Source: Prasinococcaceae sp. CCMP 1430 (taxonomy: Eukaryota > Plantae > Prasinodermophyta). From it: 47,149 bases of DNA. Below, piece by piece: positions 4,015 to 31,222 of the stretch. Location of the stretch: positions 165,249-212,397 of the forward strand of contig RQSC01000012.1 of assembly GCA_013416795.1 (NCBI GenBank). Direction: 5' to 3'. Position numbers and translations under genes: made by a program. Each line of letters starts with the position of its first letter. Within the stretch, counting starts at the first letter, position 1. The notes beneath the pieces were generated by a model, which was given only the letters and a program-made list of their open reading frames with translations, was not told where the DNA came from and did not search any database.

Positions 4015-4047
4015 GACTTCGGGCTGGCCGGCGAAGGCACGACGGCT

Positions 4048-4080: not shown

Positions 4081-4166
4081 GCCGCCGCCGCTATCGAGGG
4101 CGATGCTGCTGTCACAGCACGCGCGTGCGCGCGTGCGCGTGCGCGAGCGCGGGCGCCGTGCGCTGC

Positions 4167-5550: not shown

Positions 5551-6136
5551 NNNNNNNNNNNNNNNNNNNNNNNNNNNNNNNNNNNNNNNNNNNNNNNNNN
5601 NNNNNNNNNNNNNNNNNNNNNNNNNNNNNNNNNNNNNNNNNNNNNNNNNNNNNNNNNNNNNNNNNNNNNNNNNNNNNNNNNNNNNNNNNNNNNNNNNNNN
5701 NNNNNNNNNNNNNNNNNNNNNNNNNNNNNNNNNNNNNNNNNNNNNNNNNNNNNNNNNNNNNNNNNNNNNNNNNNNNNNNNNNNNNNNNNNNNNNNNNNNN
5801 NNNNNNNNNNNNNNNNNNNNNNNNNNNNNNNNNNNNNNNNNNNNNNNNNNNNNNNNNNNNNNNNNNNNNNNNNNNNNNNNNNNNNNNNNNNNNNNNNNNN
5901 NNNNNNNNNNNNNNNNNNNNNNNNNNNNNNNNNNNNNNNNNNNNNNNNNNNNNNNNNNNNNNNNNNNNNNNNNNNNNNNNNNNNNNNNNNNNNNNNNNNN
6001 NNNNNNNNNNNNNNNNNNNNNNNNNNNNNNNNNNNNNNNNNNNNNNNNNNNNNNNNNNNNNNNNNNNNNNNNNNNNNNNNNNNNNNNNNNNNNNNNNNNN
6101 NNNNNNNNNNNNNNNNNNNNNNNNNNNNNNNNNNNN
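5551..6136. other. Assembly gap (N run)
   Basis: Run of N bases. Confidence 1.
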
Positions 6137-7242: not shown

Positions 7243-7474
7243 GGCGGAGCAACCGCGCGCCCCGGGGGGATGGGGGGGTGGGGGGGATGAAAGGGGTGGG
7301 GGGGAAGAAGCTGCGGGCGGGCCCACACGGTGAAAGGGGCGCATATCGAAAGCGGATGAGCAACCCAACGACTGAGGGGGAAGACGAGCTCGCGGCGCAA
7401 TTTTACTGCCGCTGCGCTATCTAGCAGGTTGTGCACATGCCGCGGCGAGCCAAGTGCTAGCACACGAAGCACAA

Positions 7475-13538: not shown

Positions 13539-14520
13539 GGCGGCGGCGCGCCCGCGGCGCGCGCGGCGGCCGTGCGCGTGGTGTCGCGCTCTCGCGTGCC
13601 GGGGCGCCCGCGGAGCAACGCCCCCTGCTCGCGGTGTTGCGGCCCCCAGCTGCGCCGCCCCCTTTCCCCCGCGCTCCCCCGAGCTGCTGATCGCCAAACC
13701 CGGGCGGCAGCGGGGGCGCGCGCGGCGCGGCGCGCGAAAACGACGCGTGTCCAGTCATTTCCTGGACCGCGGCGCGCGGCGCCCCGCCAACACCCCCCCC
13801 CGCCGCGCGCGGCCTGGGGTATTTACTAGTCTACTAGTGAAGCCAAAAGCTGCCAGCCTTTCGCTGCGCGGGCGGGCGCGCGCACAGCGTGTGATGGATG
13901 GGACGGTGCTGTTGACAATCAATTGTTCGCAGCTGCCATCAGTCAGCAGGGCCCTCGTCGGAACCCAAATCATTTTCTTTTTTTTTTCTCACCCCGCCCC
14001 TCCCCCGAATTGAGTGCGGCGCACCTCGCGGGTTCGCGTCGGCCAAATGGGCGCCCGACCGGAAGGGCGCGCGGCGCGCGCGCATGCGGCGCGATGGCCC
14101 GCGCGATGGCATCGCGGGCGATTGGCGGGGCGCGAAAAGCGCATCGCTCGCGCCGAAAACGCGCGCCGAATCCAAATAAATCTAAAAAACGAGTACAGAT
14201 TTTCCCGCACGCGAAATGCTCCTTCGGCGGCGCCGCGCGAGGTCGGCGCGCAGGCGACTCGCGCGGGGACCCGAGAGAGAGAGGGACTTCCGTTTTTTTT
14301 TTTTGCGCGCGCCGCGGCGATGCGAGGGCGGGCGTGCAGGCAGGCTGGGATGAACGGGGGCACAGGGCAGGGGAGGACGCGCGCGCGGCGCCGCCCCCCG
14401 GGGCGGGGACGGGGGCAGACCTCGATACGCTCGTTTCCTCAACCTCTCGCGCGCCCCGCGCGCACGCGCGCCGCCGCTCGCACCCTCCCTCCTGCGGGCG
14501 CCCGCGCGTTTCGGAGGGAG

Positions 14521-17184
14521 ATGGCAGCGGCCGCTGCGGAGACGCTCGGCACCGCCGAGGCGCCCGCGGCGCCCGCACCGGGGACGGGCGGGGATGCGGC
14601 GAAGGGAGGGCAGCCCCAAGAGGTGGGGGCGATCGGTGGCGAGGCGCAGGCGCCGAATGCCGCGGGTGGGGCGCCTGCCGCGGACGCTGCGGGTGGCGCC
14701 GGCGAGGGCGGCGAGCAGAGCCCGCGCCCAGCCGAGGACGGGGGCGGCGCGCAGCGCGCAGCAGCTAACGGTAGCGCCGGCGGAGAGCACCCCGCGGCGC
14801 AGACGGGATCTGGCGAGGCGAAAGGTCCTGGCGTGCCCCTGCCGTGGCCCCTGCTGCGCTCGGGCGGAGGCGGAGGTGGAGAAAAGGCCACCGTGAGCAG
14901 GGCGGCGCTCGCGGTGTTTGCGGAGGGCGATGCAAAATGCGTCCCAGGTGCGGGGCGGACCAGCAACGGCGGCGTAGCAGCCGGGAGCCATCACGGCTGC
15001 AGCAACGGCAAGTTGGCGCACCGGGACGGCCCGGTCTTGGGTGATGGCAGCGACGGCGCGGTCAAAGGCGTGGGCGGCGCCGGCGAGGCCGCCACGGCAC
15101 CCGCGGAGGGGACCAAGGGCCCGGTCGTGTGGGGGGCGCTGCTTGAGGCGGGCGAGGAGGCGAAGATGCTTGCGTCAATGGCGTCCGACGCCGCCAAGAA
15201 AGTCGAGCTCGAGGTCGCCCATGCGAGCGAAGCGAACTTCATGGAGGCGGAGCTGATGCCAGTCCTCGGGCAGTCCCCGCTGTCGGAGCGTCTCGACCTG
15301 GTCGTTTGCGGCGACAGCCAGAGAGTGGTGTTGCGGAGCTGCTTCTCGGCCCATTACGCCCAATGCGAGGCATACCGGCGCGATGCCAGCGCCGCCGCGA
15401 AGCATGCCGAGGGTGCATTGGCTGCGGCGGCTGCGCTCGGAGAGCGCGAGCGTGCGCAGGGCCGCAAGAGTGACCTGGCACAAAAGCGTGGCACCACGCC
15501 CGAGACCGCTGCAGCGGGTGGCAGCAGCAATGGCGACTTTGTCCTTCCCACGCGCGGGGAGTGGCTGCAGGCAATCGACGGTCTTCGAGGGCGGTACTTG
15601 GATGAAGGCAACGGGCTCACGAGCGGCGCTGTTAAGAGGAAGCGCTCGCAAGCGCCGCGGGAGAAGTCACGCCGGAAACGCACAGACGCTATCCTCGCAG
15701 ACATGGGCCGGCAGATTGGGGAGCGTGAGGACGGGGGCGGCGACGCAGGGGCTGGCGGCGGTGGTAGCGGCAGCTCGCAGCGCTCGGAGCTCGATGCCCT
15801 TCTTTCGGCGTACCGAAGCTGCATTCGCCCATCGGCGGGCCGGAGCGGCGGAGCCAAATCACAGCAGGACCACCTCTTCTCGTACCCGACGCAGGAAGAC
15901 TTCGAGGACACCACGCCGCAGACAAGCGGCGGCAGCGTGGACCTTACGCGGGTGCAGAGTGGACTCATGGAGCCCTTCCGCGTCGCGCCGATCGCGACGC
16001 CGAAAGCCTCGTGGCGGAACGCACGGTTTCTGTCGTTCCTTCTTGGATACTTTCCCGGGCTCGAGCAGGCGCAGCTGGCTTTGCAGCAACAGAGGCAGCA
16101 GATGCAGCTTCGGCAAGCTCACGCGCAGGCACAGGCGCAGGCGATGGGTTTGACTCCAGCACAGCAACAACAGCTGGCCCAGACCCAACAGCGGCAGCGA
16201 CAGCAGCAGCAACAGTCCATGACGCAGCAGCAGCAGCCATCCCCTTCACTGCAGCAGCAGCGGCAGCAAGCTGGCACTCAGCAGCCGATGGTATCGGCCC
16301 CGATGACGCAACAGTCCATGGTGCAGGCGGCGATGGAGCAGGCTGCCGCAATGGGACAGCTGCCCATCGGCCAACAGCAGCAGCAGGCACAGCAGCAGCA
16401 GCAGCGGCGGCAGCAATCGCTCGGGCAACAACAGCAGCTTCAGCAGCAGCAGCAGCAGCAGTTGCAGCAGCTCCAGCAGCTCCAGCAGCAGCAGCAGCAG
16501 CAGCAGCGCCAGCCCATGCAGCAAGTTCAGTTGCACCAGCTGACTCCTGCACAGCAGCAGCGACTCCTGCAGCGTATGCAAGCGCAAGGGCTCACCCCAG
16601 CGCAACAAGCGCAGATGCAAGAGCGCATTCGGCGGGCGCAGGAGGCGCGGGCTGCGATGAACCCTTTGCACCGAACCCAGCAAAGCCAGCTTTCACAGAT
16701 GACTCCCGCGCAGCAGCAACAGCTGTTGCAGCAGCAGATGCAGCAGCGTGGCCTGACTCCAGCGCAACAGGCGCACTTTCAGCAGCGTCTGGCGCAGCAG
16801 CAGCAGGCAAGGGCACAGGCACAGGCTCAGGCCCAGCAGCAGCAGGCCCAACAGCAGCAAAAGGGCCAACAGCAGCAGCAGCAGGCCTCGCAGCAGCATC
16901 CTCAGACGCAGGCGCACCAGCAGCAGCAGCAGGCCCTGCAAAAGCAGGCTACCACTTCAAATGCGCGGCCGGAGGGGCACATGCCTATCAGCTCTGGGGC
17001 TATGGCGCAACAGGTGCACCACGCAATCGCACAGGCGCAGGCGCAGGCAATGCAGGCACAGGCAATGCAAGCGCGTGCGCAGGCACGCGCAGGCCAGCAG
17101 CCACAGCAGACGCAGCAGGGCCAACAAGTTCCACCGCAGCAGCAGCCGGCGCAAATGTGGCAGCAGCAACCGCAGAGCAATTAG
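14521..17184 (+). CDS. Uncharacterised protein with an Ala/Gly-rich N-terminus, a central helical region and a very long Gln-rich C-terminus; putative transcriptional co-regulator
   Basis: Long open frame from ATG 14521, CAG/CAA-rich 3' third, TGTAA downstream. No family recognised. Confidence 0.7.
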   Translation: MAAAAAETLGTAEAPAAPAPGTGGDAAKGGQPQEVGAIGGEAQAPNAAGGAPAADAAGGAGEGGEQSPRPAEDGGGAQRAAANGSAGGEHPAAQTGSGEAKGPGVPLPWPLLRSGGGGGGEKATVSRAALAVFAEGDAKCVPGAGRTSNGGVAAGSHHGCSNGKLAHRDGPVLGDGSDGAVKGVGGAGEAATAPAEGTKGPVVWGALLEAGEEAKMLASMASDAAKKVELEVAHASEANFMEAELMPVLGQSPLSERLDLVVCGDSQRVVLRSCFSAHYAQCEAYRRDASAAAKHAEGALAAAAALGERERAQGRKSDLAQKRGTTPETAAAGGSSNGDFVLPTRGEWLQAIDGLRGRYLDEGNGLTSGAVKRKRSQAPREKSRRKRTDAILADMGRQIGEREDGGGDAGAGGGGSGSSQRSELDALLSAYRSCIRPSAGRSGGAKSQQDHLFSYPTQEDFEDTTPQTSGGSVDLTRVQSGLMEPFRVAPIATPKASWRNARFLSFLLGYFPGLEQAQLALQQQRQQMQLRQAHAQAQAQAMGLTPAQQQQLAQTQQRQRQQQQQSMTQQQQPSPSLQQQRQQAGTQQPMVSAPMTQQSMVQAAMEQAAAMGQLPIGQQQQQAQQQQQRRQQSLGQQQQLQQQQQQQLQQLQQLQQQQQQQQRQPMQQVQLHQLTPAQQQRLLQRMQAQGLTPAQQAQMQERIRRAQEARAAMNPLHRTQQSQLSQMTPAQQQQLLQQQMQQRGLTPAQQAHFQQRLAQQQQARAQAQAQAQQQQAQQQQKGQQQQQQASQQHPQTQAHQQQQQALQKQATTSNARPEGHMPISSGAMAQQVHHAIAQAQAQAMQAQAMQARAQARAGQQPQQTQQGQQVPPQQQPAQMWQQQPQSN

Positions 17185-17397
17185 AGCTCGTACGAGCTGA
17201 TTGCAACGCTCCCCCGATTGCAAGGCGTGCGCGCCAAGCGCAGCTGGAGGGTGACGCGATCCCCCTCACGTTTGGTGCGTCGAGTAACAGAACGGCACCA
17301 GCCACCATTGATGACCGTTGTAAGGAGATAGAAGGCCAGCTAGCTAACTAATTTTTAGAGAGAATGGAAACCACTCATCAATGTGTTTACGGCCTGG

Positions 17398-19223
17398 CTA
17401 GCGAGCTACTGCGTCGACACAATCGGCCAGCGGATTTAACAATGTCTCCCGCTCGCTTGGCGCGATACCCAGCTCAGGGTCGTCGTCGCGGAAATAAGAG
17501 ATGGCATCCTCGAAGTCGTCGCCGTCATCGCCACTGCCTGCATCGCCGCCGTCTGCCGAGACGGTCGACACCATCGTCGCGGTGAAGAGCGAGGCCAGCG
17601 CGACCTTTCTGAGCGTACGCGCCTTCCAAACCTGCGCTTCCTCGCTTCGCGGTCGACCGAGCCCGCAGCAGCACCAATGAACCAAGAATCCGTACGTTGG
17701 CCGGTGCCACAGCGTGTCTGCCCTCTGCAGAATGGCCCGCCCTTGAGCCCCGCTGCCGTCGCCGCCCCGGCACAAGTCCTTCAGCAGCGAGTTCACCTCG
17801 ACCGCGTTCTCGCGGCAGCAAAAATGAGCGCCTGATTCGCCGGCGCGCAGGCGCGCCATGTCGTCGCCGTGCAAGTGCACAGGTCAGTCATATGCATCCA
17901 TGCACGTTTGCGCGCGCACCAACACACAAAGCGTCACGCTACGCGCGATCTGGTGCTGAAACGCCATTGCCGCACCTGAGAGAGCGACGAACTTTGCACG
18001 CTTGCCCAGCCTGTGCGCCAGCGCTCTGCCGGCAGCCTCGACGGCCAGCTGATCTTGCACGCCGTGCACCACGAGGATGGGGTACGACGCTTTATGGATC
18101 GCGCGCAACTGCATCGTTGATACGCGGTGCGAAAGCAGATGTGCAATGTCACGCGGACACAGTCAGCACATAGAATTGCACCATTCGTGCGCGCGCGAGA
18201 GAGGCACAGTGCTCGCACCTCGCGCCTGGACATCCTGTGACTGTGCACTGCGTGAAGCTGCCCCTCGAGACCTGCCTGGCATTGCTCGCCGCCGTTCGCA
18301 GATGCCTCTATGTACTCCTCTCGGAGGAGCGACTGCCGGCTCGGGGAAAGCGGCTTTGGCGCCTCTTCGTTCGCTGGCGAATCCGCGTCAGCATGCGGTC
18401 CAGCTCTGCGGTCGTTTGCACCGCCATCATCGCCATCTTCGTGCATCACCTCGTCAGGGTGGTCTACTCGGTGCGTCAGCCAATCGTCAGTGTAGTGTAT
18501 CCACAAATCGAACTTTGCGCGTGCTTTGCGCGCGGGCATAAGCGAGTAGCGCATCATCTTCCCCGCTGCGCCAAGCAGAAAGTCCAGCGGAGGTAAAAAG
18601 AAAGCGGACCCACCGCCGAGGCTGCTAGAGATCGGCATGAGAGATGCCACACGCTCAGCGCCGAGAAGTGCGGCCACCTTGCACGCAATCATGCCTCCCA
18701 TCGAATGGCCCACGATGTGGATTCGCTCGCCGGGTGCATCCCAGCCGGCCGCAGCGAGTGCTGCAATCGCATCCCTCGCCATGAACTCCGTCGAGTAGTC
18801 GCTGGCGCGTGAGGGCGATCCAGAGCGCCCGATGCCGCGATTATCAACAGCAATGCACTGCCGTGCGCTGCTACTGCCGTCGAAGAGCGTGAACTGCGGC
18901 GCCCAGGCCCTGCTGGCCGCGGCGACGCCCATGATGAGCAACACGCGCGCCGGCCGGCTGCGCGTCGCGCCAGTGACCCGAGTGCCTTCGCTTTCGCATT
19001 CTTCGCTTCCACCGTCGGCTCCACCACCGCCGTGCTGTGGTGCAGGTCCGCTCCCGCCGTTCAACGGCCCGCCTGCGTGTGCGTCCCCACCTCCATCGCC
19101 GCCGCCACCACCATTGTCATCCTCCCCGTGCACTTCATAGTAGATCTCGATCGTATCGCTGCCAGCGTCGCCGGCGCCGTCCGCGGCGGCATGCCAGTTG
19201 CGCGGCACGCGTACGAATGGCAT
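17398..19223 (-). CDS. Alpha/beta-fold hydrolase; exons 19223-18219, 18108-17976, 17831-17398
   Basis: LLIMG oxyanion region, DNRGIGRS, nucleophile GHSMGG, acid in VVHGVQD, and catalytic His in SG|AHFCCRE after splicing. Both introns are GT-AG and frame-preserving. Confidence 0.88.
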
Positions 19224-19598
19224 CAGAGCCCGCAAACGAATGGGGTGGGTGGTCGCGATGGGCACGGTTGAGTGGGGAGAGCGAGCACCCGCGGCACCCT
19301 GCCAGCCCGCGGCGCTCGGGGCGCGCCTGACGCGCCGCGTGTGGCAGCAGCTGGTTGCGCGAGATGTGCTGCAACACCCCGGCCCCGACTTTTTTTTTTT
19401 TTTTTACTCGTTCGGCACAGGTTCTGTACCCTGGCTTGCTTCAGGGTACGTTCGCGGCTCCAGGGGCGGTGGGCCACACAGCGCATCCCCTTCTCCACCC
19501 CCCACCTCACCCCGCGCGCGCGCCTTCCCTCGCCTTACACGCACTCGCTCGTTGCGCTGCGCCCTCGCCGCCCTCGAGGCGCGCGAGAGGCGGGCGCG

Positions 19599-22510
19599 AT
19601 GGCCTCTGGCAGCAACAACATCCATGCGCGCCCGCCGCCGGCCAAGGTGAACTTTGGCAAGCCACCGCCTGGCTATGTACCAGGGCTCGGCCGCGGCGCA
19701 GCGGGCTTCACGACGCGCTCGGACATTGGCCCCGCGCGCCAGGCTGCGCCGGGTGACAAGGGCGCGGATGATGACGCGCGAAGGCAGAACCAGGAGTTCG
19801 ACAAGGTGTGCATGCGCGTGTGCGCGCCTGTGCATGTCGGGAGAATGGCCGCGCTATGCGGGCGCGAAGCGACGCAGCGCGCGGCGGTGCGAGGCATGCC
19901 GTGGTTCATACTGACGCGCGCTGTGCCTCCGATCCGCCCGCCTCGTGATCGCCTCGTAATCACGCACACGCCTGCGCCTCTGCGGCGCAGTTCGAGGGTG
20001 GCGATGGCGGCCTGCTTGGGGCTGGCACGTACGACGCCGAGGACGCCGATGCAGATCGAGTGTGGGCAGCAGTGGACGACCGTGTCGACGAGCGGCGCCG
20101 CGACGCGCGCGAGGCTCGCCTAAAGGCCGAGCTCGAGGCGTACCGCCGCGACAATCCCAAGATCACAGAGCAGTTTGCCGACCTCAAGCGTGGCCTCAGC
20201 GCAGTGAGCGAGGCCGAGTGGAGCGCCATCCCCGACATCGGCGACTACTCGATAAAGAAGCAAAAGAGAGAGACGTGGGCGGCCGCGCCGGACTCGCTGC
20301 TCGACCGTGCGCGCCAGGAGACCGAGCAGAGCACGTCGGCGTACGATGGCGGCGGTGAGGGCCTCAAGACTGACCTCACTGCCGTCGGCGAGGGGCGCGG
20401 GACCGTGCTTGGCCTCAAGCTCGACAAGATGAGCGACAGCGTGTCGGGGCAGACGGTGGTTGACCCTAAAGGCTACCTGACAGACCTAAGCTCGATGAAG
20501 GTGACCAGCGACACTGAGGTGGCCGACATCAAGAAGGCACGAGTGCTGCTCAAGTCTGTAACCGCCACAAATCCCAAGCACGCGCCGGGCTGGATCGCCG
20601 CGGCGCGCTTGGAGGAGGTGGCGGGCAAGATGACGACGGCGCGCGCCATCATCCAGAAGGGCTGCGACGAGTGCCCCTCGAGCGAGGACGTGTGGCTTGA
20701 GGCGAGCCGCCTACAAGTTGGCGAGCTCAGCAAGGCTGTGCTCGCGCAGGGCGTGCGTGCGATCCCAACGAGTGTCAAGCTGTGGCTGGCGGCAGCGGAG
20801 CTCGAGCACGAGGTCCCGTCGAAGAAGCGCGTGCTGCGGCGTGCCCTCGAGCAGGTGCCGAGCTCGGTGCGCCTGTGGAAAGAGGCCGTGAGCTTAGAGG
20901 GTGAAGAGGACGCTCGCGTCATGCTCAGCCGCGCAGTTGAGTGCTGCCCGCAGCACGTCGAGCTCTGGCTGGCGCTTGTGCGTCTGGAGTCGTACCGCAA
21001 TGCCAAGAAGGTCTTGAACAAGGCGCGCGAGACGATCCCAACCGAACCTGCCGTATGGTTCACCGCGTGCAAGCTTGAGGAGGCAAATGGCAACGCCGCG
21101 ATGGCGGACAAGATCATTGGGCGTGGGATGCGCTCGCTGCAAGGCCACGGCGTCATCATTGAGCGCGAGGCGTGGATGAAGGAAGCGGAGGCCGCAGAGC
21201 GCGCAGGCAGCCCGGCGACCTGCGGCGCCATCGTGCGCGCCGTCGCCACCGTCGGCGTCGAGGAGCAAGACATGAAGCGCACTTGGATGGCTGACGCCGA
21301 GGAGTGTATCAAACGCGGTAGCGTCGAGACCGCTCGCGCCATCTATGCGCACGCCATCACAGTCTTCCCTGGCAAAAAGGGCGTCTGGTTGCGCGCCGCC
21401 AAGCTCGAGCAATCCCAGGGCGAGCGCGAGCGCCTCGATGCGCTGCTGCGGAGAGCTGTCACCTACTGCCCTCAAGCGGAGGTGCTGTGGCTCATGGGTG
21501 CCAAGGAGCAGTGGCTGGCCGGGAATGTACCCGCGGCCCGCGAGATCCTGCAGGAAGCATTCGTAGCCAACCCAGAAAGCGAGGCCATCTGGCTGGCGGC
21601 GTTCAAGCTCGAGTTCGAGAACGGCGAGCCCGAGCGCGCGCGTATCATCCTGGAGAAAGCACGCGAGAGGCAACCGACAGCGCGCGTGTGGATGAAGAGC
21701 GCAATTGTCGAACGCGAGCTTGGCAACTCCGACGCCGAGCTGGCCCTTCTCAAGGAGGGGCTGGCGAAGTACCCGGCCTTCACCAAGATGTGGGCAATGC
21801 TCGGCCAGCTGCACGAGCGCCTTGGCAACCGCGTGGCCGCGAGGGAGGCGTATCATAAAGGATGCGCGCTGTGCGCCAAGGACGAGAAGGTGCCTATGCT
21901 GTGGTTGGCGCTTGCCAGGCTCGAGGAAGGCGCCGGAAACGCGGGCAAGGCGCGTGCGATGCTCGAGCAGGGGCGTCAGCGCTTCAAGGCTTCGCACAAT
22001 CGCGCGTGTCCGGAGTTGTGGCTCGCCGCCGTCCGCGCGGAGCGCCGCGCGGGCAACGAGCAGGCTGCGTCGGTGCTCCTCGCCAAGGGGCTGCAAGAGG
22101 TCCCCAGCGCCGGCCTCCTATGGGCAGAGTCCATCCGCATGGCGCCGCGGCCGCAGCGCAAGAGCAAGTCTGCAGACGCGCTCAAGAAGGCCGACAACGA
22201 TCCCCACGTGGTCCGTGCGATCGCCGAGCTTTTCCTCTCCGACAGAAAGATCGACAAGGCGCGCAACTGGCTGGAGCGTGCCGTGACGCTCGCGCCGGAC
22301 CTCGGCGATGCCTGGGCGGCGCTTTACAAACTCGAGCTGGAGCATGGCACAGATGAGCGGCAGAGCGCGGTACTTGAGCGCTGCGCCAGGGCGCAGCCCG
22401 TGCATGGCGAGGTGTGGCAGTCGGTAGCGAAGGCGGTCGAGAACGCACACCTTCCTGCGGGGCAGGTGCTGAAAAAAGTGGTCATCGCGATGTCGACAGC
22501 CGCGCAGTGA
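19599..22510 (+). CDS. PRP6: Pre-mRNA splicing factor PRP6 (U5-102K/STA1); exons 19599-19805, 19991-22510
   Basis: [83 protein letters not shown], followed by HAT repeats. Confidence 0.98.
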
Positions 22511-22619
22511 CAGCCGGCCGTGTAACAATTGGCATGTACAGTACACCACGATTATGGTCAGGGAATATGCGCAACGGCGCCGACGTGGGCCATTGATATT
22601 GTGTGTACACGAACACTCG

Positions 22620-24465
22620 CTACTCCTCCGTGAGACAGATCTTGCCATCCATTCCTACTGAGTATACTCGGTTGGAGTGCGGATGGTGGCACATGCTGAT
22701 GACCTCTGCGCCGTGGACATCCTCTGCCACGCCCTCCTCCCGGCCGTCCTTGGCGAAGCATGTAATCGCCTGGGCCTCGCTCGCTGCGTAGACAAACTCG
22801 CCAGACGGGCTCAGGCAGCAAGCAGTGTACACGGGGGCACCATTTGCGTCCGCCTTGGCGTGCTTGTACGAGCGCAGCACTTCGCCCTCGGTTGACATCA
22901 CATGCAGCTCTGGCGAGCGCGTGCAGACCAGCAGGGCACCGTCCTGGCCGGGAACGGGGGCGAGGTCGACGAGCTGCGGCATGACAGCCGCAGTCTCGGC
23001 GGTGGGCGACGGCGGTTTGAAGCTCAACAGGTTGTCGCCTGTCTTGGCATCCCATACCTGTGTTGGACGTCGCAGGTGACGGCACAGACAGTGAGTCAGC
23101 TCGCACGGCCTCGCATGACAAGTATCGCCCCCATCATCGGTATGAGCAAATGCGCGGGCGCAAGCGCGCTCGGCGCCGTGGCGGGCGGACCTTAATACTT
23201 CCGTCGCGGGCGCCCGAGTACACCCGCGACATGTCGGCGCCGTAGACTGCACGAACCACGGAACCATCGTGCCCACGCATCTCTTTGATCATGCGCCCAG
23301 ACTTGAGGCCGTGGACGCGGACGAGGCCATCTGAGCCCGCGCTCAAAACGTGCGAGTTGTCCCGGCTAAACATGACGCTGTTGGTGCTGCCTGCATGTGC
23401 GGCCGTGAATATGCGCAGGAGCTGGCCTGTGCGCACGCGCCAGACCTTGATGACGCCATCTAACGAGCCAGACGCCAGCAGCTCCGAGTCACGGCTGAAC
23501 GCAACGCACAGCACCGAGTCGTCGTGCATCATAAATGCGTCGTCCGCCTGGAACTGCAGGTCTGTGCGCATTTTCCCCGTGGCCACATCGAGCACCTCAA
23601 TGAAACCATCGCTCGTGCCCGCCACCAAGAAGGCGCCGTCAGCCGACACGGCTACGCACTCCGAGTGTGACTTCTTGCTCCCGACGCGAGTGCGTCGAGC
23701 GGGCGCCACGCACGGCCGTTCACCGCGGGCAGCGGCCGCACCTCCCCCCTCGCCCTTGGCAGCCTTGCCCGCAAGCAGGTCGAAGCGGCCGCCAGCGAGC
23801 GGCACCTGGCCAATGTTCTGCTGCCACTTTAGCGCCTGCCCCAAGAGCGCGAGGAGGCGCCCAGGGGGCACATCCGCGGCCTCCTGCAGCAATTTGTCGG
23901 CGGCGCGGCGCCCGCGTCAGCCTCATTGCGGGCAAAGCTTGCGCTGGCAGCGATGGCTGCGCCGCCGCGCTGAGCGCAGGCACGCGCGACGCACCTTCCC
24001 CAGCAGCGCCGCCACAGCCTCCCGCCGCGACTCGCGACCCCCGGCGCCGTACGCCTCCCTGGCGTCGAAGTAAGGGCCGGTGACGATCCTCTCGAGCCGC
24101 GCGTGTTTCTCCGGGTGCGCCTGGCGCATCTCGGCCATCACTGCCGTCTGGCGCAGAAGCGCCTTGGCCGTGTCGGCCTCTCGAGCCTCCGCCATCTCAA
24201 GCGCGACAAGCTCGTAGAGCGCCTCGAGCGTGGATCTCGGGAGTTCCAGCGTGGCTACGGCGGGGAGCACCGCGTCCCACCTGCCACGCCTTGTGTCTGC
24301 GAGCAGTGCCGCGCGGCCGCCCGCCGGCGCGTTGAGGCTCACGCGCGCCTCGCGCGCGAGCGCGACGGCCGTCGCGTCCAGGCCCGACTCGCGGGCCCAC
24401 TGCAGCACGACGCGCACGACGTCCTGCGCGTCGATCTCCACCGGGGCCCCTTCGCCAGAAGCCAT
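22620..24465 (-). CDS. SMU1: SMU1 LisH/CTLH-WD40 spliceosomal protein; exons 24465-23995, 23883-23191, 23057-22620
   Basis: EIDAQDVVRVVLQW, GRWDAVL, LLRQT, YFDAREAY, VPPGRLLALLGQALKWQQ, DGFIEV and MMHDDSVLCVAFSRDSELLASGS, followed by WD40 repeats. Both introns are frame-preserving. Confidence 0.95.
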
Positions 24466-24811
24466 TTCTGTCCGATCCAAACCCCGGCGCACCCCCCTCC
24501 GCACCCCTCCGCGCAGCCGCAACACCGCCGCCGCACGCCCCCGCTGTGGCGCGGGCGCGCGCTCACAGCGAGCAACCTAGCTCGAGGCACTTTTCGCCAC
24601 CAACTGACACAAAAAAGCGTTGGGCGTGTACGTGTGCGCTGCCACACGCCGCCGCCGCCGCGCCAGAGCTAGCGAGCGCACGCACGCGGCCGTGGCCGCG
24701 CGGCTGCGGTCGCCGCGCGCCAGCGCCTAGCGTCCGAGCGTCTCTGCGCCCCTCGCCGCCCCCGGTCTTTTCCCCTGCGGCAAGGCGACGCCGCTCGTAC
24801 ACGTGCGTGCG

Positions 24812-27558
24812 ATGGGCGAGCAGGCAGCAGCCCCGGCTGTTGGGGGCGCGGCGGCGACGGCGTCCACGGCAGCGGCGGCAAAGGCTGCAGCAGCAGCGGC
24901 GGCGGCGGCGGCGGCAGCGGCAGCAGCAGCGGGAGCTGACGACGAGCAGTCTCTCGGCGACGCGCTTCTGCCGACTGTGTGCGCGGCGCTTGCTCGCGGC
25001 GAGGCTGATGCTGGCGCGCTCGCCGACGAGCTGCGCACAGCCGCAGCAGCGCGTGCCGCAGAGATCGAGCAGCTCTGTAGGGAGCACTACGGTGCGTGCG
25101 CCCCCGCGCCGCGCCCAAGCCCCACACCTCTTGCGACCATACCTGATACACCGACCTATCGGGGCGCGTCCGTCCCCCGCTGACGCGGCTGCTGCACGCC
25201 CGCCCCTTGTCCCGCACGTGGTGCGCAGATGAGTTCGTGCTCGCCGTCGATGAGTTGCGATTTGTGCGCGAGGAGGGTGGCGCCCTGCGTGAGCGTGTCG
25301 TTGCACAGGATGACGCTGTGCAAGAGTCGGGTACACGAGTGCTCTCCTCCCTTGAGAGCCTTATATCTACCAGGGAGGGAGCGGAGCGAATGTCAGCGGC
25401 CGCATCTGCCGCCGATGTGTGCCTGGCCGCGCTGGAGTGCTGCAGCGAGGCAAACGCTGCCCACGCGTCGCGCGACTTCTACGGCGCGATCCGAGCGCTC
25501 GGGGAAATCCGAAAGGTGCATATCCCGGCCGTGGGCGTGGCATCTGCGGAGCTGGCGGGCTATCTCGAGCGCTGCGCTCCGCGCTGCGAGGCCCAGATCG
25601 TACGCCAGGTGACACAAGAGCTCAACGCCTGGTTGACCGAGGCCCGCTCGCTGGCGCGCGCAGCGGGAATGGCGGGCATACGCGCCGCGACGGCACGACG
25701 CAGGCGGCTGGCGGAGCTCGCAAAGCAGCAGGACAGGGCGCTGGCGTCCATGCACCGGACTGATGGCGACGGCGGCGGCGTTTTGGAGTTCCCGCTCGGT
25801 GACGAGCGCGATGAGGACGAGGGCCAAGCCAACGAAGCGGGTCTGCAGGAGGACGACGGCGCGGAGGCGATGGACCTGACGCCGCTGCATAGATGTGCGC
25901 ACGTGCAAAGCATGCTGGGTCGCTCGGACGACTTCGCCGCGTACTACGTGGAGAATCGCGCAGCCCAGCTCCGCTCGGACCTTTCGAAGGTGGTGGCCGG
26001 CCTCGGCGACGGCGGTGGCGGCAACGGAAGCGCTGGCGGGGGGGCGTCCGACCCGGGCGTCGCCTTTCTGCAGAGCTATCAGTCTTCGGTCGCGCAGGTA
26101 GTCGGCTTTTTCTTGGTCGAAGCGCGCGTTTTGCGCTCGGGCGTCAATGGCATGAGCGCTGCGGCGACGAGAGCCCTGTGGGGAGAGGCGGCCTTCACGC
26201 TGGCGTCCGCGCTACGCACGAGCGCCGGTGTCATGCGCGACCCCGGGCAGGTACTCGTGGTGCGAGACTTTGTCGCGCTGGCTGCCGACGCTGTCCGCGC
26301 GGTGGGATTCGACGCCCGTTCCCTGGATGCTGCGCTCAATGGCACGCGCGAGATGTACATGAGCCTGCTCGCCAACGACGCGGCCGAGCAGATCCGCTCG
26401 GTTCTCAGCACGGGGAGCCTGGAGCCATTCGAGGTGAGCACCGAGGGCGAGATGGAGCGGCAGGTGGTTGCGTACGGCTTGCACGAGCTCGCGGTGGGCC
26501 AGGCGTCCGAAGCGGGGCGCGGCCAGAGCCCGATTGGCGTGGCTAGCAGCCCTGGCGATGGAAACGCGCCGCCCGCGTCCCCGGCAGCGTCGAGCTCGCC
26601 GCGCCTGCCGTGGCGGGCGCCGTTCAGCGCCTCGGTGCCCCGCGTGTGCCAGTTGACGAGCCGCTTCCTGGGTGACATGGCCCAGTTCCTTGGCACGGTG
26701 TCCATGCCGGCCGCGGAGGCGCGCGCCGCCCTCGCGTCCGGCGTGTCGACGTTGCTGGCGGAGGCGGCGCCAGGCGCCGTGGACGGCGCTCTGTCCGCCG
26801 AGAGCCTGCCCGTCGCGAAGGCCGTGCGGCTCTCCCTTGACGCGGCCGCTCTGAAGACGAGCTGTGCTGCGCTCGAGCGCCGCGCGAAGCACGTCTGCTG
26901 GCAGGAGATGCGCGTAGAGGTCTCCCCCAAGGAACTCTTCGCTCAGGCGACGTTGGCACTCGAGGCTGCGAGCAAGAGGGCCACAGACTGCGCGGCGAAC
27001 ACCATGCTGGTGTTTGTGGAGCGGTACCGAATGGCGAACGCCGGCCGATCGTGGGCGCCGGACGCGCCACCGGCGGTATCGCAGGGGCTGACGGTGCCCT
27101 CCGCCGAGATGGAGGATCTGGCGGAGCAGCTCGCGATGTCCTTCGCCAGCGTGCGCGCGTTCCTCTCGCGCGAGGAGTACGCGCGCCTGTGCGCGCAGCC
27201 GCTGGGCCAGGCCGGCGCCTGGCTCGCGGGCGCGCTCGCGTCCGAGGCGTCGCGCCACTGGAATCCGTGGGGGCTGGCGACGCTCGACGCGGAGCTGCGG
27301 CGGCTGGAGACGGCGGTGCGCTCCGCCGAGCTGCCCGACACGCAGCTGGCGGAGGCCCGCCAGCTCGTGAGCCTGCTGCAGAGCCAGAGCCTAGAGCGGC
27401 TCGACGAGGCCGGCTACCTCCAGCGCCAGTACCCGCGGCTATCCGCGGCGAAAGTGCTGATCGTGCTGGAGAAGTACCGCGAGCCGCCGAATGACCGCAC
27501 CTCGTTCATGCGGCGCAAGGCCGTCGACGCGGCGCTCAAGAAACTCAGGCGGCAATAG
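24812..27558 (+). CDS. SEC15: Exocyst complex component SEC15 (EXOC6); exons 24812-25091, 25229-27558
   Basis: EIEQLCREHY|DEFVLAVDELR, LTPLHRCAHVQSMLG...FAAYYVENRAAQL, VVGFFLVE and APFSASVP. Poly-Ala N-terminus. Confidence 0.9.
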
Positions 27559-28770
27559 CGGCGGCGGCCCGCGCCCGCGCGCCCGCCGCGACTGCCGGTA
27601 GTAGTAGGTAGCTGCTCTCTCTCTCTAGACTAGCTAGCTAGGGCCCCCTGTGAGAAGATCAGTCCGTCCGTGCATAGTGTCCTCACCACGGCTGGCGCCG
27701 ACGTCGAAGCGGCCGGGGTGGTGTGGCGAAACAGCAAGCACGCAACCCACCGCTGGCTCGTCCGGCGGGGGGGCTCGGCACGCACAGCCCGTCGCTCGCC
27801 GCCTCGCTACCCCGCGGCGGCGGCCCTCCCCACTTTGCCCCTTCCCCTCCCCTCCCCCCCTCCCCCCGGTCCCCTGCGCGCCGCGTTTCCGCCATCGCAC
27901 GAGCATGCCATCGCTCGCCATCGAGCGCATGTGCGCGCCGGCGCCGCTCAAGGGGCACTGCGCCGCGTGGCGGGGGCACTTTTCGCGGTTGGGCCGCGGG
28001 CGCCCCGCCGTGCCCGTCTCTCCCGCGCCGGGATTGAGCCGCGCGCGCGGCACGTCGGCGCCCTCCGGTTCGGGCGGGGGAACGGCGCGCCATCCCATCA
28101 CGCCGCACGCGCCTCACATCCACGGCCTCATCTGCGCCGCGCCCTCAGTCAAGTCAGCCCGCGCTCCGCGCTCGCCCCCGCCCCGCTCCCCGTCCGGCGC
28201 CCGGCCACAACCGCCCGCGGACTGTCGGGACCGAAAAGTGCAAACAAGATCCATCCGCCCGCGCGCGCGGATCCCGCTCCGCGGAACCTCGAAACCCATC
28301 AGAACGCATCCGCGCGCGACTGCATGTGAAAGTGTCTGATATTTGTCACCCGCAAAAAAAATCGCGCGGACGCGGGCGAAGCCACGTGCCCTTTTTTGCC
28401 CTTTTTTTCTCGGGGCGCGGCAGTTTCGAGGGGGAGCGGCGCGGAGCGGAGATGTCGAAACGAAGGCGCTCTGAATTTACGGAAGTGAATTCGGATGGTG
28501 CGCGGCGGCGGGCGAACGGCGGCGCCCTCGCGGAAGGGCGCGCGCGCGCCGGGGCGACGCAGCCACACGGCGGCGCGCGGACGCCGGCGGCGCGCGCGCG
28601 CGTGTGGTGGTGGTGGTGGTGGGGTGGGTGGGGCGGAGGAGGAAAGAGAGCGACCGCGCTCCCTCTCACCGCCCTTCCGCTTCTGGCGCGCGCGCTTCGC
28701 CGACCCCTCCGCTCGCACCACGCCGCCGACGCCGACAACGCGCCCGCAAACAAACACTTCCACGCCAAGC

Positions 28771-28793
28771 GGGGGGGGGGGGGGGGGGGGGGG
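28771..28793 (+). repeat. Poly-G tract (23 nt) just upstream of the ZTL-like start codon
   Basis: Direct reading. Confidence 0.9.
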
Positions 28794-28831
28794 AGGGTAA
28801 CCCTTACCGCCGCCCGCGTTTCGGTACCGCC

Positions 28832-31222
28832 ATGCTGCTCCCGGCAGACGCCCAGCAGGCGCTGGGGTGCGCGGTGGGGGGGGGGGCTCTGAAGCTGTCC
28901 GGCCGCGAGGACGCCGCGGGGCGCGCGTCGGAGGAGGCGTCCCTGGAGGAGGCCGCCGCGGCCGCCGCGCTGCGCGCGCCCGGCGATGGGGAGGCCGCGG
29001 CGCAGCCGGCCACGCTGCTGTCGCTCACCGACGCGATCCTGGCCGCGCACGTGCTGCGGCGCTGCCCAATACGCGACGTGTGCGCCATGGCGGGAGTGTG
29101 CCGTCGGCTGCGCCGCACGGTGTTGCAGTCGAGCGGGATGTGGGAGGCGCTCTTCGAGCGTGACTTCGGCACGCACGCCGCCGCGGGCGTGCGAAAGGCG
29201 CTCTCGCAACGCTTCACCTGGCGGCACGCAGCGCGGCAGATGATCGACCTGAGCGGGCTGCACTGGAACAAGCTGCACGCACGGGTTGCGCCCACCATCA
29301 GGCCGCGCTGCAACTTTGCGCTCTGCGCAGTGGGCGAGAAGCTGTACACGTTCGGCGGCGAGGGCGAGGGCATGACGGCGCAGGGCGACGTGTGCATGGT
29401 CGACCTCGCTGCCACCGCGCCGCAGTGGCAGCACGTCGAGACTGTGGGCGAGTCGCCCCCCCCACGGTGGGGGCACACGCTGACGCACGTCGAGGGCGAC
29501 AGCGGCAGCACCCTCGTGGTGTTCGGCGGATGCAATCCCGAGGGAGCGCTCGACGACCTGTGGGTGCTGGAAATCGACGGGGAGCCGATGCCGCGCTGGC
29601 GGCGTGTGTGTGCGGCGCGAGCCAAGGCGCGTGCGCGCACCTGGCACTCGAGCTGCGTGGTGGAGGGCTCGCGTTTGGCAGTGTACGGTGGTGCCACGAT
29701 GGACGGCACCCTGCTCTCCGACCTGGCTGTGATTGATGTGCTCGCCGAGCGTCCCTGCTGGAGGGTCATCGAGGCGGAGAGCGAGGGCAAGCCCTCCGCC
29801 CGCCTTGGCCAGTCCCTCGTGAGCATCGGCGGCGCACGCCTGCACATGTTCGGTGGCCTGGCGTCGGGCTCCAGGCCAGGCGAGAGCAGCCATTCGGACG
29901 AAACGTACGTGATCAATGTTGACGACGACGTGCCCCGATGGGAACGCGTGGGAACCGCCGGGCCGAGCAGCTCGAACGACAGCGTCGGTAGGAGCGACGC
30001 CGCGCAAGTCAAGCCCTTGGGAGATCGCGAGCATCGGCCCACGCCGAGGTACGATCACGCGTGCCTCGGCCTGCCGGGCGGTCGTGTGCTGATCTTCGGA
30101 GGGCTCGGACAGCTCGGGTTGCAGTCGCCAATGCAGATCTTTGCCATCACGCCGAACTCGGCAGCACCGCACTGGCGCAGATTGTGTCCGCGTGGCACGC
30201 CGCCGGAAAATGCTTGGGGCCACTCCACTCACCTCACGCGCGGGCTGAACGTCGTGATGATTGGTGGCGGCGCTTCGGATGGCTCCGACTGGGACTTGGG
30301 CACGATTCACGAGCTCAGGCTCGTCTGTGCAGAGCCCGAGGCGCGTTCTGATGCCGCCACGCGCGTGCGCCCAGCGGTGCGCAAGTCTCCAAAGCAGTGG
30401 CGCGCGTTGCATGCCGAGGTCCCGGTCATCCGCAGCGACGGCGATGGTAGCGGCGGCAACGAGAGTGGCGGAGAGACCAGCAGCGGTGCTGGGGGTAGCG
30501 GCGATGACGACAATGTGCTGCCCGAGAGTGTGCCCGGCGCTGGCATGCGCAAGCTCGACTGGACCAGCCCTCAGCGACAGGGGGAGGCCTGCGCACGCGG
30601 CGCCGCCGCCGCCAACACGTGCACGGATGAGCCGGACTTTGGAGGCCAGGTCCGGAGCACGCAGTACTACGCCGCTGCCGGGACGGGCCACCCGTCGAGG
30701 GCACTCTTGAATCGTGCGCGGGCCGGTGTGGGCGGAGAAGAGTCGCGGAAGTACTATGGCTCTGAAGAATCGTCAAGTGGGGAAGAGACCCCGCCGGGCG
30801 CCGTGGCTGTGAAGTCGATTGGTCGAGATGGAGGTGGGTCGATGGGGGACGCTGCAGCCCAGGCTCCTCTACTGTCTGAGAGTCCTGCGGGCCACAAGCG
30901 CGTGCGCGAGTGGTCAAGTCGCGAGGCGACCTCGGGCAGCAACGACATGAGCACGAGCGACGGGCTGAGCATGAGCACAAGCGAGCCCTTCAGCTCGGGG
31001 TCGGGCTCGACCTCAGTCCGTGAGACGTCTTCGGGGTCGGGATCCGGATCGGGGTCTGGCTCCAACGACAGCAGCTCCTCTTCTCCAGGAGAGTCGTCCG
31101 GTCCGGATGACGTCGCCGAGGAGCCCAAGGGCAGTCCCTCCGCCTCGCACTCATCAGGCGCGCCTCCCTGCAAACCGCTCGTGGTGTTGGCCACGGCTCA
31201 TGCCCCAAAGCCGCGCGAGTGA
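28832..31222 (+). CDS. ZEITLUPE/FKF1/LKP2 (ADAGIO)-like F-box plus six Kelch repeats, lacking the LOV domain, with a Ser/Gly-rich C-terminal extension
   Basis: F-box LLSLTDAILAAHVL...RDVCAMAGVCRRL. Kelch blocks RCNFALCAVG..LYTFGGEG, PPPRWGHTL, LVVFGGC, RTWHSSCVVEG, ARLGQSL..GG..MFGGLASG, PTPRYDHA..LPGGRVLIFGG, PP.NAWGHST and WDLGTIHELRL are collinear with the ZTL family as recalled. Confidence 0.85.
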   Translation: MLLPADAQQALGCAVGGGALKLSGREDAAGRASEEASLEEAAAAAALRAPGDGEAAAQPATLLSLTDAILAAHVLRRCPIRDVCAMAGVCRRLRRTVLQSSGMWEALFERDFGTHAAAGVRKALSQRFTWRHAARQMIDLSGLHWNKLHARVAPTIRPRCNFALCAVGEKLYTFGGEGEGMTAQGDVCMVDLAATAPQWQHVETVGESPPPRWGHTLTHVEGDSGSTLVVFGGCNPEGALDDLWVLEIDGEPMPRWRRVCAARAKARARTWHSSCVVEGSRLAVYGGATMDGTLLSDLAVIDVLAERPCWRVIEAESEGKPSARLGQSLVSIGGARLHMFGGLASGSRPGESSHSDETYVINVDDDVPRWERVGTAGPSSSNDSVGRSDAAQVKPLGDREHRPTPRYDHACLGLPGGRVLIFGGLGQLGLQSPMQIFAITPNSAAPHWRRLCPRGTPPENAWGHSTHLTRGLNVVMIGGGASDGSDWDLGTIHELRLVCAEPEARSDAATRVRPAVRKSPKQWRALHAEVPVIRSDGDGSGGNESGGETSSGAGGSGDDDNVLPESVPGAGMRKLDWTSPQRQGEACARGAAAANTCTDEPDFGGQVRSTQYYAAAGTGHPSRALLNRARAGVGGEESRKYYGSEESSSGEETPPGAVAVKSIGRDGGGSMGDAAAQAPLLSESPAGHKRVREWSSREATSGSNDMSTSDGLSMSTSEPFSSGSGSTSVRETSSGSGSGSGSGSNDSSSSSPGESSGPDDVAEEPKGSPSASHSSGAPPCKPLVVLATAHAPKPRE

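What the first reader, a model, noticed from the sequence alone, without database searches (positions are those of the whole stretch)
28832..31222. ZEITLUPE/FKF1-type F-box-Kelch protein with no LOV photosensor in an early-branching green alga
Seen: the F-box and all six Kelch repeats (29015-30322) follow the ZTL/FKF1/LKP2 family motif by motif, down to the terminal W..L..IHEL.L. Only about 61 aa precede the F-box, and I find no LOV signature (GxNCRFLQ) upstream as far as the SEC15 stop. A roughly 300-aa Ser/Gly/acidic tail replaces the usual short C-terminus. Established: plant ZTL proteins are LOV-F-box-Kelch blue-light-regulated SCF receptors of the circadian clock, and model chlorophytes (Chlamydomonas, Ostreococcus) are generally described as lacking them. 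Inference: this could be the ancestral, light-independent substrate receptor before LOV fusion, or a secondary LOV loss. It may define an undescribed algal clock or proteolysis module, possibly regulated through the phosphorylatable tail or a separate LOV protein.
Basis: partly seen in the sequence, partly recalled or inferred. Interest (0 to 1): 0.82.

Follow-up and report, generated by a model that had tools for sequence, protein, structure and literature searches.

The report
ZEITLUPE-type F-box-Kelch protein without LOV
A marine green picoalga (probably Prasinoderma) has an intact gene for the protein-degradation half of the plant clock photoreceptor ZEITLUPE but not its blue-light sensor, so this module can exist without its own light sensing, though the data cannot say whether that state is original or a later loss.

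Summary
A single intron-free ORF (28832-31222, +) encodes 796 aa. It has a 61-aa disordered N-terminus, an F-box, a ZTL-type linker, six Kelch blades ending in IHELRL, and a 298-aa Ser/Gly/Ala-rich tail. The best hits for the F-box-Kelch part are streptophyte ZTL/FKF1 proteins (E 1e-84, 37-41% identity, 98% coverage). In a tree it falls inside the ZTL clade with 100/100 support against other F-box-Kelch proteins. No LOV is detectable in the 1.27-kb upstream spacer or anywhere else in the 47-kb window.

The interpretation needs correcting. LOV-F-box-Kelch proteins do exist in Chlorophyta (Pseudoscourfieldia/Pycnococcus, Tetraselmis, Cymbomonas, Pterosperma), so the fusion predates the chlorophyte-streptophyte split. 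A second LOV-less lineage also exists: Chloropicophyceae, where NCBI already names the Chloropicon primus protein "adagio-like". Long unconserved C-terminal tails are common in prasinophyte ZTLs.

The window protein is the most divergent member of the set and its position within the clade is unresolved. Whether it is ancestral or a secondary loss stays open, and I lean slightly to loss.

It most likely works as a light-blind SCF substrate receptor that recruits targets through its Kelch propeller. A clock role is speculative, because the known ZTL substrates bind the LOV domain. Verdict: a new variant of a known kind, of moderate interest.

The parts
28832..31222 (+). Complete intron-free gene, 796 codons plus stop: a LOV-less ZTL-clade F-box-Kelch protein
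   Evidence: ORF and translation. The codon-position GC shift starts at the ATG. Homology to ZTL/FKF1.
28832..29014 (+). N-terminal 61 aa, Ala/Gly/Glu-rich and predicted disordered. This is where ZTL proteins carry about 190-250 aa including LOV.
   Evidence: AF2 pLDDT is below 50 for residues 1-55. No PAS or LOV hit. Other family members have 189-451 aa before the F-box.
29015..29260 (+). F-box (aa 62 to about 105) and the ZTL-type helical linker (to about aa 143)
   Evidence: Pfam F-box E 0.008. Collinear with ZTL F-boxes: L.L.D..L....L.R..P.RDV......VCRRL, then W..(L/V)....(F/W)G and W...AR.(L/M)..L....W.K. AF2 helices span 67-139. Best PDB match is FBXO42, aligned over 469 columns that include the F-box.
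29261..30322 (+). Six-bladed Kelch beta-propeller (aa 144-497) ending in DWDLGTIHELRL, with a lineage-specific disordered insert at aa 376-397
   Evidence: Pfam Kelch families E 3e-49. GG doublets at 175/176, 232/233, 286/287, 341/342, 423/424 and 478/479, and 42 columns invariant across 26 family members. AF2 pLDDT is mostly above 90. dN/dS is about 0.2 over the last blade against a marine relative.
30326..31219 (+). 298-aa Ser/Gly/Ala-rich, mildly acidic C-terminal tail, with an (SG)5 run at aa 734-743 and a SSSSS run at aa 747-751
   Evidence: Composition, and open-by-chance p 0.001-0.005. GC3 is 0.74 against 0.84 in the core. No similarity to the tails of other algal ZTLs.
27559..28831 (.). 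Spacer between the Sec15 stop and the start codon. It has no coding signal, no LOV, and a 23-nt G run at 28771-28793.
   Evidence: The sequence itself. Flat codon-position GC. tblastn and Pfam both negative.

Best explanation
The gene encodes a divergent member of the ZEITLUPE/FKF1/LKP2 (ADAGIO) F-box-Kelch clade that has no LOV photosensor.

Inferred mechanism. The F-box docks the protein onto SKP1 in an SCF (SKP1-CUL1-F-box) ubiquitin ligase. The six-bladed Kelch propeller recruits the protein or proteins to be ubiquitylated, as the FKF1 Kelch domain does with CDF/Dof factors. Because there is no flavin-binding LOV, the receptor has no blue-light sensing of its own. It also lacks the surface that ZTL uses for GIGANTEA, TOC1 and PRR5. 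Any control must therefore come from expression, from the disordered tail, or from partner proteins.

Shown here: the architecture, clade membership, absence of LOV in the locus, an intact fold, and purifying selection on the last blade.

Inferred only: SKP1 binding, substrate recruitment by Kelch, and any physiological role.

Evolution. The LOV-F-box-Kelch fusion predates the chlorophyte-streptophyte split. The host appears to be a Prasinoderma-like alga, a lineage sister to both groups. Its LOV-less state is therefore either a secondary loss (about 55-60%) or the pre-fusion state (about 30%). The confidence given is for the core statement (a LOV-less ZTL-clade F-box-Kelch receptor), not for the polarity.
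For: - Homology: E 1e-84, 37-41% identity and 98% coverage to ZTL/FKF1. The collinear alignment includes the F-box, the linker and the terminal HEL motif.
- Exhaustive HMMER search: the ZTL representative scores 3.5e-79, against 2.5e-28 for the best F-box-Kelch protein outside the clade that aligns over the F-box and blades (P0193).
- Tree: the clade including the window has 100/100 support against outgroup F-box-Kelch proteins.
- No LOV.
- Fold: AF2 pLDDT 80, pTM 0.79, a helical F-box plus a six-blade propeller. The best solved match is the SCF receptor FBXO42.
- Function retained: all 42 family-invariant columns are kept. dN/dS is about 0.2 against a marine relative that is 72% identical over the last blade.
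- LOV-bearing forms in Chlorophyta and a LOV-less Chloropicophyceae clade.
- Domain roles in Arabidopsis: PMC7968664.
- Host: 70% GC, intron-poor, 98-99% identical to Tara Oceans contigs, and a PRP6 gene about equally distant from streptophytes and chlorophytes.
Against: - The Pfam F-box match is below the gathering score, and SKP1 binding is untested.
- The protein has replaced 14 of 81 family-conserved residues, the most in the set. These include both arginines of the blade-4 GPLRLRS motif, so partner specificity may have changed or been lost.
- No transcript evidence was available, so a distant or trans-spliced LOV exon cannot be formally excluded.
- Polarity is undecided. Simple parsimony on the species tree favours the pre-fusion reading (one gain, against a gain plus a loss).
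- The host identification is inferred, not proven.
Confidence: 0.8

Rival explanations
1. Pre-fusion ancestor. The lineage split from other green plants before a LOV domain was joined to this F-box-Kelch gene, so the protein preserves the original, light-independent receptor.
For: - If the host is Prasinodermophyta (sister to Chlorophyta plus Streptophyta, PMC7455551), one gain on the Chlorophyta+Streptophyta stem explains the data without any loss.
- The AU test does not reject the window protein as sister to all other clade members (p 0.28).
- The outgroup F-box-Kelch proteins lack LOV.
- Tajima-type tests against the outgroups show the window lineage is not faster than chlorophyte LOV-bearing lineages. 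Part of the long branch may therefore belong to the stem of the others.
Against: - The best tree places it weakly with streptophytes (90/75 and 88/72), not at the base.
- LOV loss demonstrably happens in this family, in Chloropicophyceae. Loss of the whole gene is common too, for example in Chlamydomonas, Ostreococcus and most mosses.
- The Chlorophyta+Streptophyta stem is short compared with the stem of the family, so a gain landing exactly there is unlikely a priori.
- A gene tree cannot distinguish this reading from an early loss.
Confidence: 0.3
2. Gene-model artefact. A LOV exon exists but lies outside the ORF, either far upstream, on another contig, or trans-spliced, so the real protein is an ordinary ZTL.
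For: In another alga the gene caller missed upstream LOV exons split by introns (P0131 on L011). Several apparently LOV-less database hits were only N-terminal truncations.
Against: - In L011 tblastn found the split LOV exons easily (E 1e-9 and 1e-5). The same kind of search finds nothing in the whole 47-kb window.
- The upstream spacer is only 1.27 kb, has no assembly gap, ends at a same-strand Sec15 gene, and shows no codon periodicity.
- The ATG at 28832 coincides with the start of strong GC3 bias, and genes in this window are largely intron-free.
Confidence: 0.05
3. Decaying or neofunctionalised relic. After losing LOV the protein no longer acts as an SCF receptor of the ZTL type. The propeller has drifted to an unrelated binding role or is becoming non-functional.
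For: It has the lowest retention of family-conserved sites (67 of 81), loss of the RLR motif in blade 4, a 22-aa disordered insert, a sub-threshold Pfam F-box, and a 2.0 substitutions-per-site branch.
Against: - The ORF is fully open over 796 codons.
- All 42 invariant structural columns are kept.
- The fold is predicted with confidence.
- dN/dS is about 0.2 against a related species, and the long stem is shared with that relative. The divergence is therefore old and has been followed by conservation.
Confidence: 0.07

Closest known systems
Arabidopsis ZEITLUPE / FKF1 / LKP2 (ADAGIO 1-3) and their streptophyte orthologues, e.g. Klebsormidium ZTL and Marchantia MpFKF
   Same: The F-box, the F-box-to-Kelch linker, six Kelch blades and the terminal W.L.ELHEL motif are all collinear. 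Identity is 37-41% over about 440 aa. These are the best hits in the searches of 5.8 and 1.84 billion proteins.
   Different: - No LOV domain: 61 aa precede the F-box, against 190-250 aa.
- A 298-aa tail, against 4-48 aa.
- 14 of 81 family-conserved residues are replaced.
- It cannot sense blue light by itself, and it lacks the LOV surface used for GI, TOC1 and PRR5.
Chlorophyte LOV-F-box-Kelch proteins: Pseudoscourfieldia marina / Pycnococcus provasolii 'adagio-like protein 1' (XRB08336.1, AML77552.1), Tetraselmis, Cymbomonas tetramitiformis KAK3275099.1, Pterosperma
   Same: They belong to the same clade, come from marine prasinophyte-grade algae, and have long, unconserved, low-complexity C-terminal tails of 133-321 aa in most members.
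   Different: They keep a LOV domain with the NCRFLQ cysteine motif. Identity to the window protein is only 28-32%.
Chloropicon primus 'adagio-like protein' QDZ24255.1 and its Chloropicophyceae relatives (P0127, P0134, P0135, P0140)
   Same: They are LOV-less members of the ZTL clade on a long stem (1.13). An AU test does not reject joining them with the window protein (p 0.13).
   Different: They form a separate, well-supported clade at about 30% identity. They have long low-complexity N-termini (89-358 aa) and almost no C-terminal tail. They also keep the blade-4 GP(V)RAR motif that the window protein lost.
Human FBXO42 (F-box plus Kelch SCF substrate receptor, PDB 9o04)
   Same: It is the best structural match to the AF2 model (E 6e-19, 469 aligned columns covering the F-box and the propeller). 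It is an example of a light-independent F-box-Kelch receptor.
   Different: Only 17% identity. It is a different family and not an orthologue.

Membership tests
ZTL/FKF1/LKP2 LOV-F-box-Kelch photoreceptor family | N-terminal LOV (PAS) domain with the flavin-binding GxNCRFLQ cysteine motif | tested here: not met
   No motif in six frames of the window. No tblastn hit with seven ZTL N-termini. No PAS Pfam hit in the protein or in upstream ORFs.
ZTL/FKF1/LKP2 LOV-F-box-Kelch photoreceptor family | Central F-box of the ZTL type, followed by the conserved linker | tested here: met
   Pfam F-box E 0.008, which is below the cutoff. It is nevertheless collinear with ZTL F-boxes and linker, is helical in the AF2 model, and aligns structurally with the FBXO42 F-box plus Kelch.
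ZTL/FKF1/LKP2 LOV-F-box-Kelch photoreceptor family | Six C-terminal Kelch repeats forming one propeller that ends in the (L/I)HEL motif | tested here: met
   Pfam Kelch E 3e-49. Six GG doublets and 42 invariant columns. AF2 propeller at aa 144-496. IHELRL at aa 492-497.
ZTL/FKF1/LKP2 LOV-F-box-Kelch photoreceptor family | Phylogenetic placement inside the clade rather than with other F-box-Kelch proteins | tested here: met
   100/100 support for the clade against outgroups P0193 and P0237. The position within the clade is unresolved. Only two outgroup sequences were used.
ZTL/FKF1/LKP2 LOV-F-box-Kelch photoreceptor family | Blue-light-dependent binding of GIGANTEA and degradation of TOC1/PRR5 or CDFs | not testable with these tools
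   This needs biochemistry. In Arabidopsis, GI, TOC1 and PRR5 bind through LOV (PMC7968664), which is absent here.
SCF F-box substrate receptors in general | F-box that binds SKP1, plus a separate substrate-binding domain | tested here: inconclusive
   The architecture and fold fit. SKP1 binding was not tested, and the Pfam F-box score is below threshold.

The most novel reading that the evidence does not exclude
The protein preserves the pre-fusion state of the ZEITLUPE family: a light-independent F-box-Kelch receptor that existed in the first green plants before LOV was added. A variant of this idea is that it still receives light input in trans. Its Kelch domain could bind a separate LOV protein, as the Arabidopsis ZTL Kelch domain binds the ZTL LOV domain in yeast two-hybrid assays. 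Unchecked scan notes list stand-alone LOV proteins in this genome.
Probability: 0.3. Interest if true: 0.72.

Novelty: new variant of a known kind. Interest (0 to 1): 0.5.

Why it matters
ZTL/FKF1 proteins are the only known photoreceptors that are themselves ubiquitin-ligase receptors, and their origin is usually placed in charophytes.

This locus, together with the chlorophyte proteins found here, moves the origin of the F-box-Kelch core to the base of green plants. It also moves the origin of the LOV fusion to at least the chlorophyte-streptophyte ancestor.

Two natural LOV-less versions now exist for comparison: this one and the Chloropicophyceae clade. They would allow a direct test of what the Kelch propeller does on its own, which is still unclear even in Arabidopsis. 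They would also show whether light input can be supplied in trans.

The finding is not a new mechanism. It is a domain-architecture variant whose function is inferred, not shown.

Tried and rejected
- Database hits that looked LOV-less (P0020, P0022, P0086, P0104, P0119, P0131) turned out to be N-terminally truncated models that still carry half a LOV domain, or have upstream LOV exons.
- The look-up of encoding contigs found no record for my exact gene model.
- A scan of metagenome contigs for close relatives found nothing. Only two short fragments exist. L006 is 98.9% identical over 359 nt but has unmatched flanks, so it is probably chimeric. L005 is 72% identical at the amino-acid level over the last blade.
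- Syntenic Tara contigs (L007, 98.2% over 14.2 kb) stop about 300 bp after Sec15 and do not reach the gene. Contigs from the species with 79% PRP6 identity end too early.
- I tested whether the two LOV-less lineages changed the same LOV-era conserved sites. There was no significant excess (7/17/12/69, one-sided Fisher p 0.10). The first count (p 0.016) was inflated by LOV columns misaligned to the window's N-terminus.
- Adding the relative's fragment did not change the placement.
- The tail has no similarity to other algal ZTL tails (E above 1).
- No solved ZTL Kelch structure exists. The best PDB sequence hit is the BSU1 Kelch domain at 3e-17.
- Suetsugu and Wada 2013 is not held in the library. 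No paper found discusses LOV-less ZTL homologues in algae.
Full report
**What is there**

Window 28604-31222 (+) is one open reading frame. Its first in-frame ATG is at 28832. Third-position GC is 0.7-0.8 and no higher than the other codon positions upstream of that ATG. It rises to 0.98 in the first full block after it and stays near 0.84 through the conserved part, as it does in the neighbouring Sec15 gene.

The 1.27 kb between the Sec15 stop (27558) and the ATG has no codon periodicity. It contains low-complexity runs, including 23 consecutive G at 28771-28793. I therefore take 28832-31222 as the gene. It has 796 codons and no intron is needed.

**Domains**

- Pfam gives strong Kelch matches (PF24681, E 3e-49) and a weak F-box (E 0.008, aa 72-98), with nothing else.
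- An AlphaFold2 model of aa 1-520, built on a 26-sequence family alignment, has mean pLDDT 80 and pTM 0.79.
- In that model residues 1-55 are disordered, 67-139 are helical (F-box plus linker), and 144-496 form a beta-propeller. One disordered insert lies at 376-397.
- Six GG doublets mark six blades.
- The best solved structural match is human FBXO42, an F-box-Kelch SCF receptor. It aligns over 469 columns that include the F-box.
- No ZTL Kelch structure is in the PDB.

**Is it ZTL-type?**

Yes.

- The F-box-Kelch part (aa 55-500) finds streptophyte ZTL/FKF1/adagio proteins as its 120 best hits. These score E 1e-84 to 2e-73 with 35-41% identity and 96-100% coverage.
- Against Klebsormidium ZTL it aligns aa 39-501 to 185-618 at 38% identity.
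- In an exhaustive HMMER pass over 1.84 billion representatives, the ZTL representative scores 3.5e-79. The best F-box-Kelch protein outside the clade that aligns across the F-box and blades scores 2.5e-28.
- The alignment shows every family motif in order: the F-box, the W..(V)...WG and W..(L)AR.(L)..L....W.K linker, PRCNF..CAVG, FGGEG, P.RWGHT, VVFGGC, R.WHSSC, the PRxDH motif (PRLDH in the family, PRYDH in the window), LIFGG, AWGHST, and the final W.L..(L/I)HEL.L.
- An IQ-TREE analysis (LG+C20, 413 columns, 33 rows) unites the window protein with all ZTL-type proteins at 100/100 against two LOV-less F-box-Kelch outgroups.

**Is LOV really absent?**

- No NCRF-type motif occurs in any of the six frames of the 47-kb window.
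- tblastn with the first 230 residues of seven ZTLs gives nothing below E 0.2, and nothing sensible upstream of the gene.
- Every + strand ORF between Sec15 and the gene is blank for PAS/LOV in Pfam, even at E 10.
- As a positive control, the same tblastn approach readily found intron-split LOV exons upstream of another alga's mis-called gene (E 1e-9 and 1e-5).
- The only assembly gaps in the window are at 3204-3848 and 5551-6136, far from the gene.
- A missed exon remains formally possible without RNA data, but I rate it at about 5%.

**Host**

- The window is about 70% GC with long intron-free genes.
- A Tara Oceans scaffold is 98.2% identical over 14.2 kb of the window.
- The PRP6 gene in the window has a 99% and a 79% environmental relative. 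After those it is about equally similar (62-67%) to streptophyte and chlorophyte PRP6.
- The scan's own tally of 536 windows implies roughly 25 Mb.
- These features match Prasinoderma coloniale (25.3 Mb, 69.8% GC, sister to Chlorophyta plus Streptophyta; PMC7455551).
- An earlier follow-up note reached the same guess.
- This identification is an inference, not proof.

**What the wider family looks like**

Pfam scans and cluster look-ups of the distant hits show full LOV-F-box-Kelch proteins in several Chlorophyta:

- Pseudoscourfieldia marina / Pycnococcus provasolii, named "adagio-like protein 1"
- Tetraselmis
- Cymbomonas tetramitiformis
- Pterosperma

Coesel et al. 2021 had already reported ZEITLUPE transcripts from several chlorophyte orders (PMC8017926). 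Linde et al. 2017 placed the family's first appearance in charophytes and listed none in Chlamydomonas or Ostreococcus (PMC5638080). The LOV fusion therefore predates the chlorophyte-streptophyte split.

A second LOV-less lineage also exists. Chloropicon primus QDZ24255.1 ("adagio-like protein") and four environmental relatives have an F-box and Kelch repeats but no PAS hit. They form a 100/100 clade on a 1.13 stem. I found no paper that discusses LOV-less members.

**Position and rate**

- Within the clade the window protein sits on a 2.0 substitutions-per-site branch. It attaches weakly to the slowly evolving streptophyte group (90/75, or 88/72 after adding a relative's fragment).
- AU tests reject neither a basal position (p 0.28) nor a union with the Chloropicophyceae (p 0.13).
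- Mean identities: window to streptophytes 39%, window to chlorophyte LOV-bearing forms 33%, Chloropicophyceae to streptophytes 40%.
- Relative-rate counts against the outgroups show the window lineage is faster than streptophyte lineages but not faster than chlorophyte ones.
- It keeps all 42 invariant columns, but only 67 of the 81 positions that are at least 90% conserved in the other members. That is the lowest value in the set. The changes include both arginines of the blade-4 GPLRLRS motif.

**Is it functional?**

A 530-bp Tara contig from a related species encodes the last blade at 72% amino-acid identity, with dN/dS of about 0.19-0.24. dS is about 1.2, which is near saturation. In the tree the long stem is shared by both species. 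The divergence is therefore old and was followed by purifying selection.

**The tail**

- It is 298 aa, with S 18%, G 14%, A 12%, 39 acidic and 29 basic residues, and an (SG)5 run.
- Five other reading frames of the same DNA carry 2-9 stops each. Staying open by chance has p about 0.005, or 0.001 from base composition alone.
- Its codon bias is weaker than in the core (GC3 0.74).
- Prasinophyte ZTLs commonly have tails of 133-321 aa, but none resembles this one.
- In the relative's contig the frame stops 30 aa after HELRLV.
- The tail is probably translated, but it is lineage-specific and unlikely to carry a conserved function.

**How it probably works**

By architecture and fold it is an SCF substrate receptor. 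The F-box would bind SKP1 and the Kelch propeller would bind the substrate.

Arabidopsis work shows that TOC1, PRR5, CHE and GI bind the LOV domain of ZTL. It also shows that the FKF1 Kelch domain binds CDF (Dof) factors, and that the ZTL Kelch domain binds the LOV domain of family members (PMC7968664).

A LOV-less member therefore cannot use the canonical clock-substrate interface. If it is conserved in function at all, it would act through Kelch-mediated recognition. P. coloniale does have Dof factors. A clock role, phospho-regulation of the tail, and pairing with a separate LOV protein are all speculation.

**Ancestral or lost?**

If the host is a prasinodermophyte, both readings predict the same basal gene-tree position, so the tree cannot decide.

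- Parsimony favours a single gain after the split.
- Against that, LOV loss and whole-gene loss are frequent in this family, and the relevant stem is short.
- My estimates are loss about 55-60%, pre-fusion about 30%, and the remainder artefact or other.

**Verdict**

This is a new architectural variant of a known family. A similar variant is already present, and annotated, in another algal class. Interest is moderate.

Noticed in passing
P0158, P0127, P0134, P0135, P0140 (not in the window): Chloropicophyceae (Chloropicon primus QDZ24255.1 'adagio-like protein' and four marine metagenome relatives) form a well-supported LOV-less branch of the ZTL clade. They have long low-complexity N-termini and no C-terminal tail. 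I found no paper discussing them.
   Followed up: partly
P0273/P0128, P0130, P0142, P0144, P0126, P0129; L011:2265-5274: Full LOV-F-box-Kelch proteins occur in several prasinophyte-grade Chlorophyta, which is earlier than the 'first in charophytes' statement in the clock literature. P0131 on L011 has intron-split LOV exons that the gene caller missed. P0126 has DCRFLQ in place of NCRFLQ.
   Followed up: partly
L005:1-530: A Tara contig from a relative encodes the last Kelch blade at 72% identity. It is preceded by about 100 nt of AT-rich repeated sequence (an intron or a chimera), and its frame stops 30 aa after HELRLV. The long tail may therefore be absent in that species.
   Followed up: partly
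window 28771-28793 and 28604-28628: A run of 23 G about 40 nt upstream of the start codon, and a (GTG)n/GGTGG stretch further upstream. These could be 5'-UTR or promoter low complexity, or an assembly-prone homopolymer.
   Followed up: no
window 10088-12118 (+): An ORF combining an F-box-like domain (aa 217-260) with a JmjC/cupin_8 domain (aa 495-608). This is a second F-box protein in the window.
   Followed up: no
window 13697-27860; L007: Tara Oceans scaffold TARA_SAMEA2622637_METAG-scaffold_2191 is 98.2% identical over 14.2 kb and has the same gene order (hydrolase, PRP6, WD40, Sec15). The organism or a conspecific is therefore present in open-ocean metagenomes.
   Followed up: yes
window about 19600-22507; L007:5986-8897: The PRP6 gene is called as two overlapping ORFs, a PRP1_N piece followed by the main body. 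This suggests a short intron or a frameshift near its 5' end.
   Followed up: no
window 3204-3848 and 5551-6136: Two assembly gaps (runs of N). They inflate several long ORFs listed across 1863-7368.
   Followed up: no
window 44191-46149 (+): A type III glutamine synthetase (GSIII_N, Gln-synt_C and the C-terminal domain), a form better known from bacteria and some protists.
   Followed up: no
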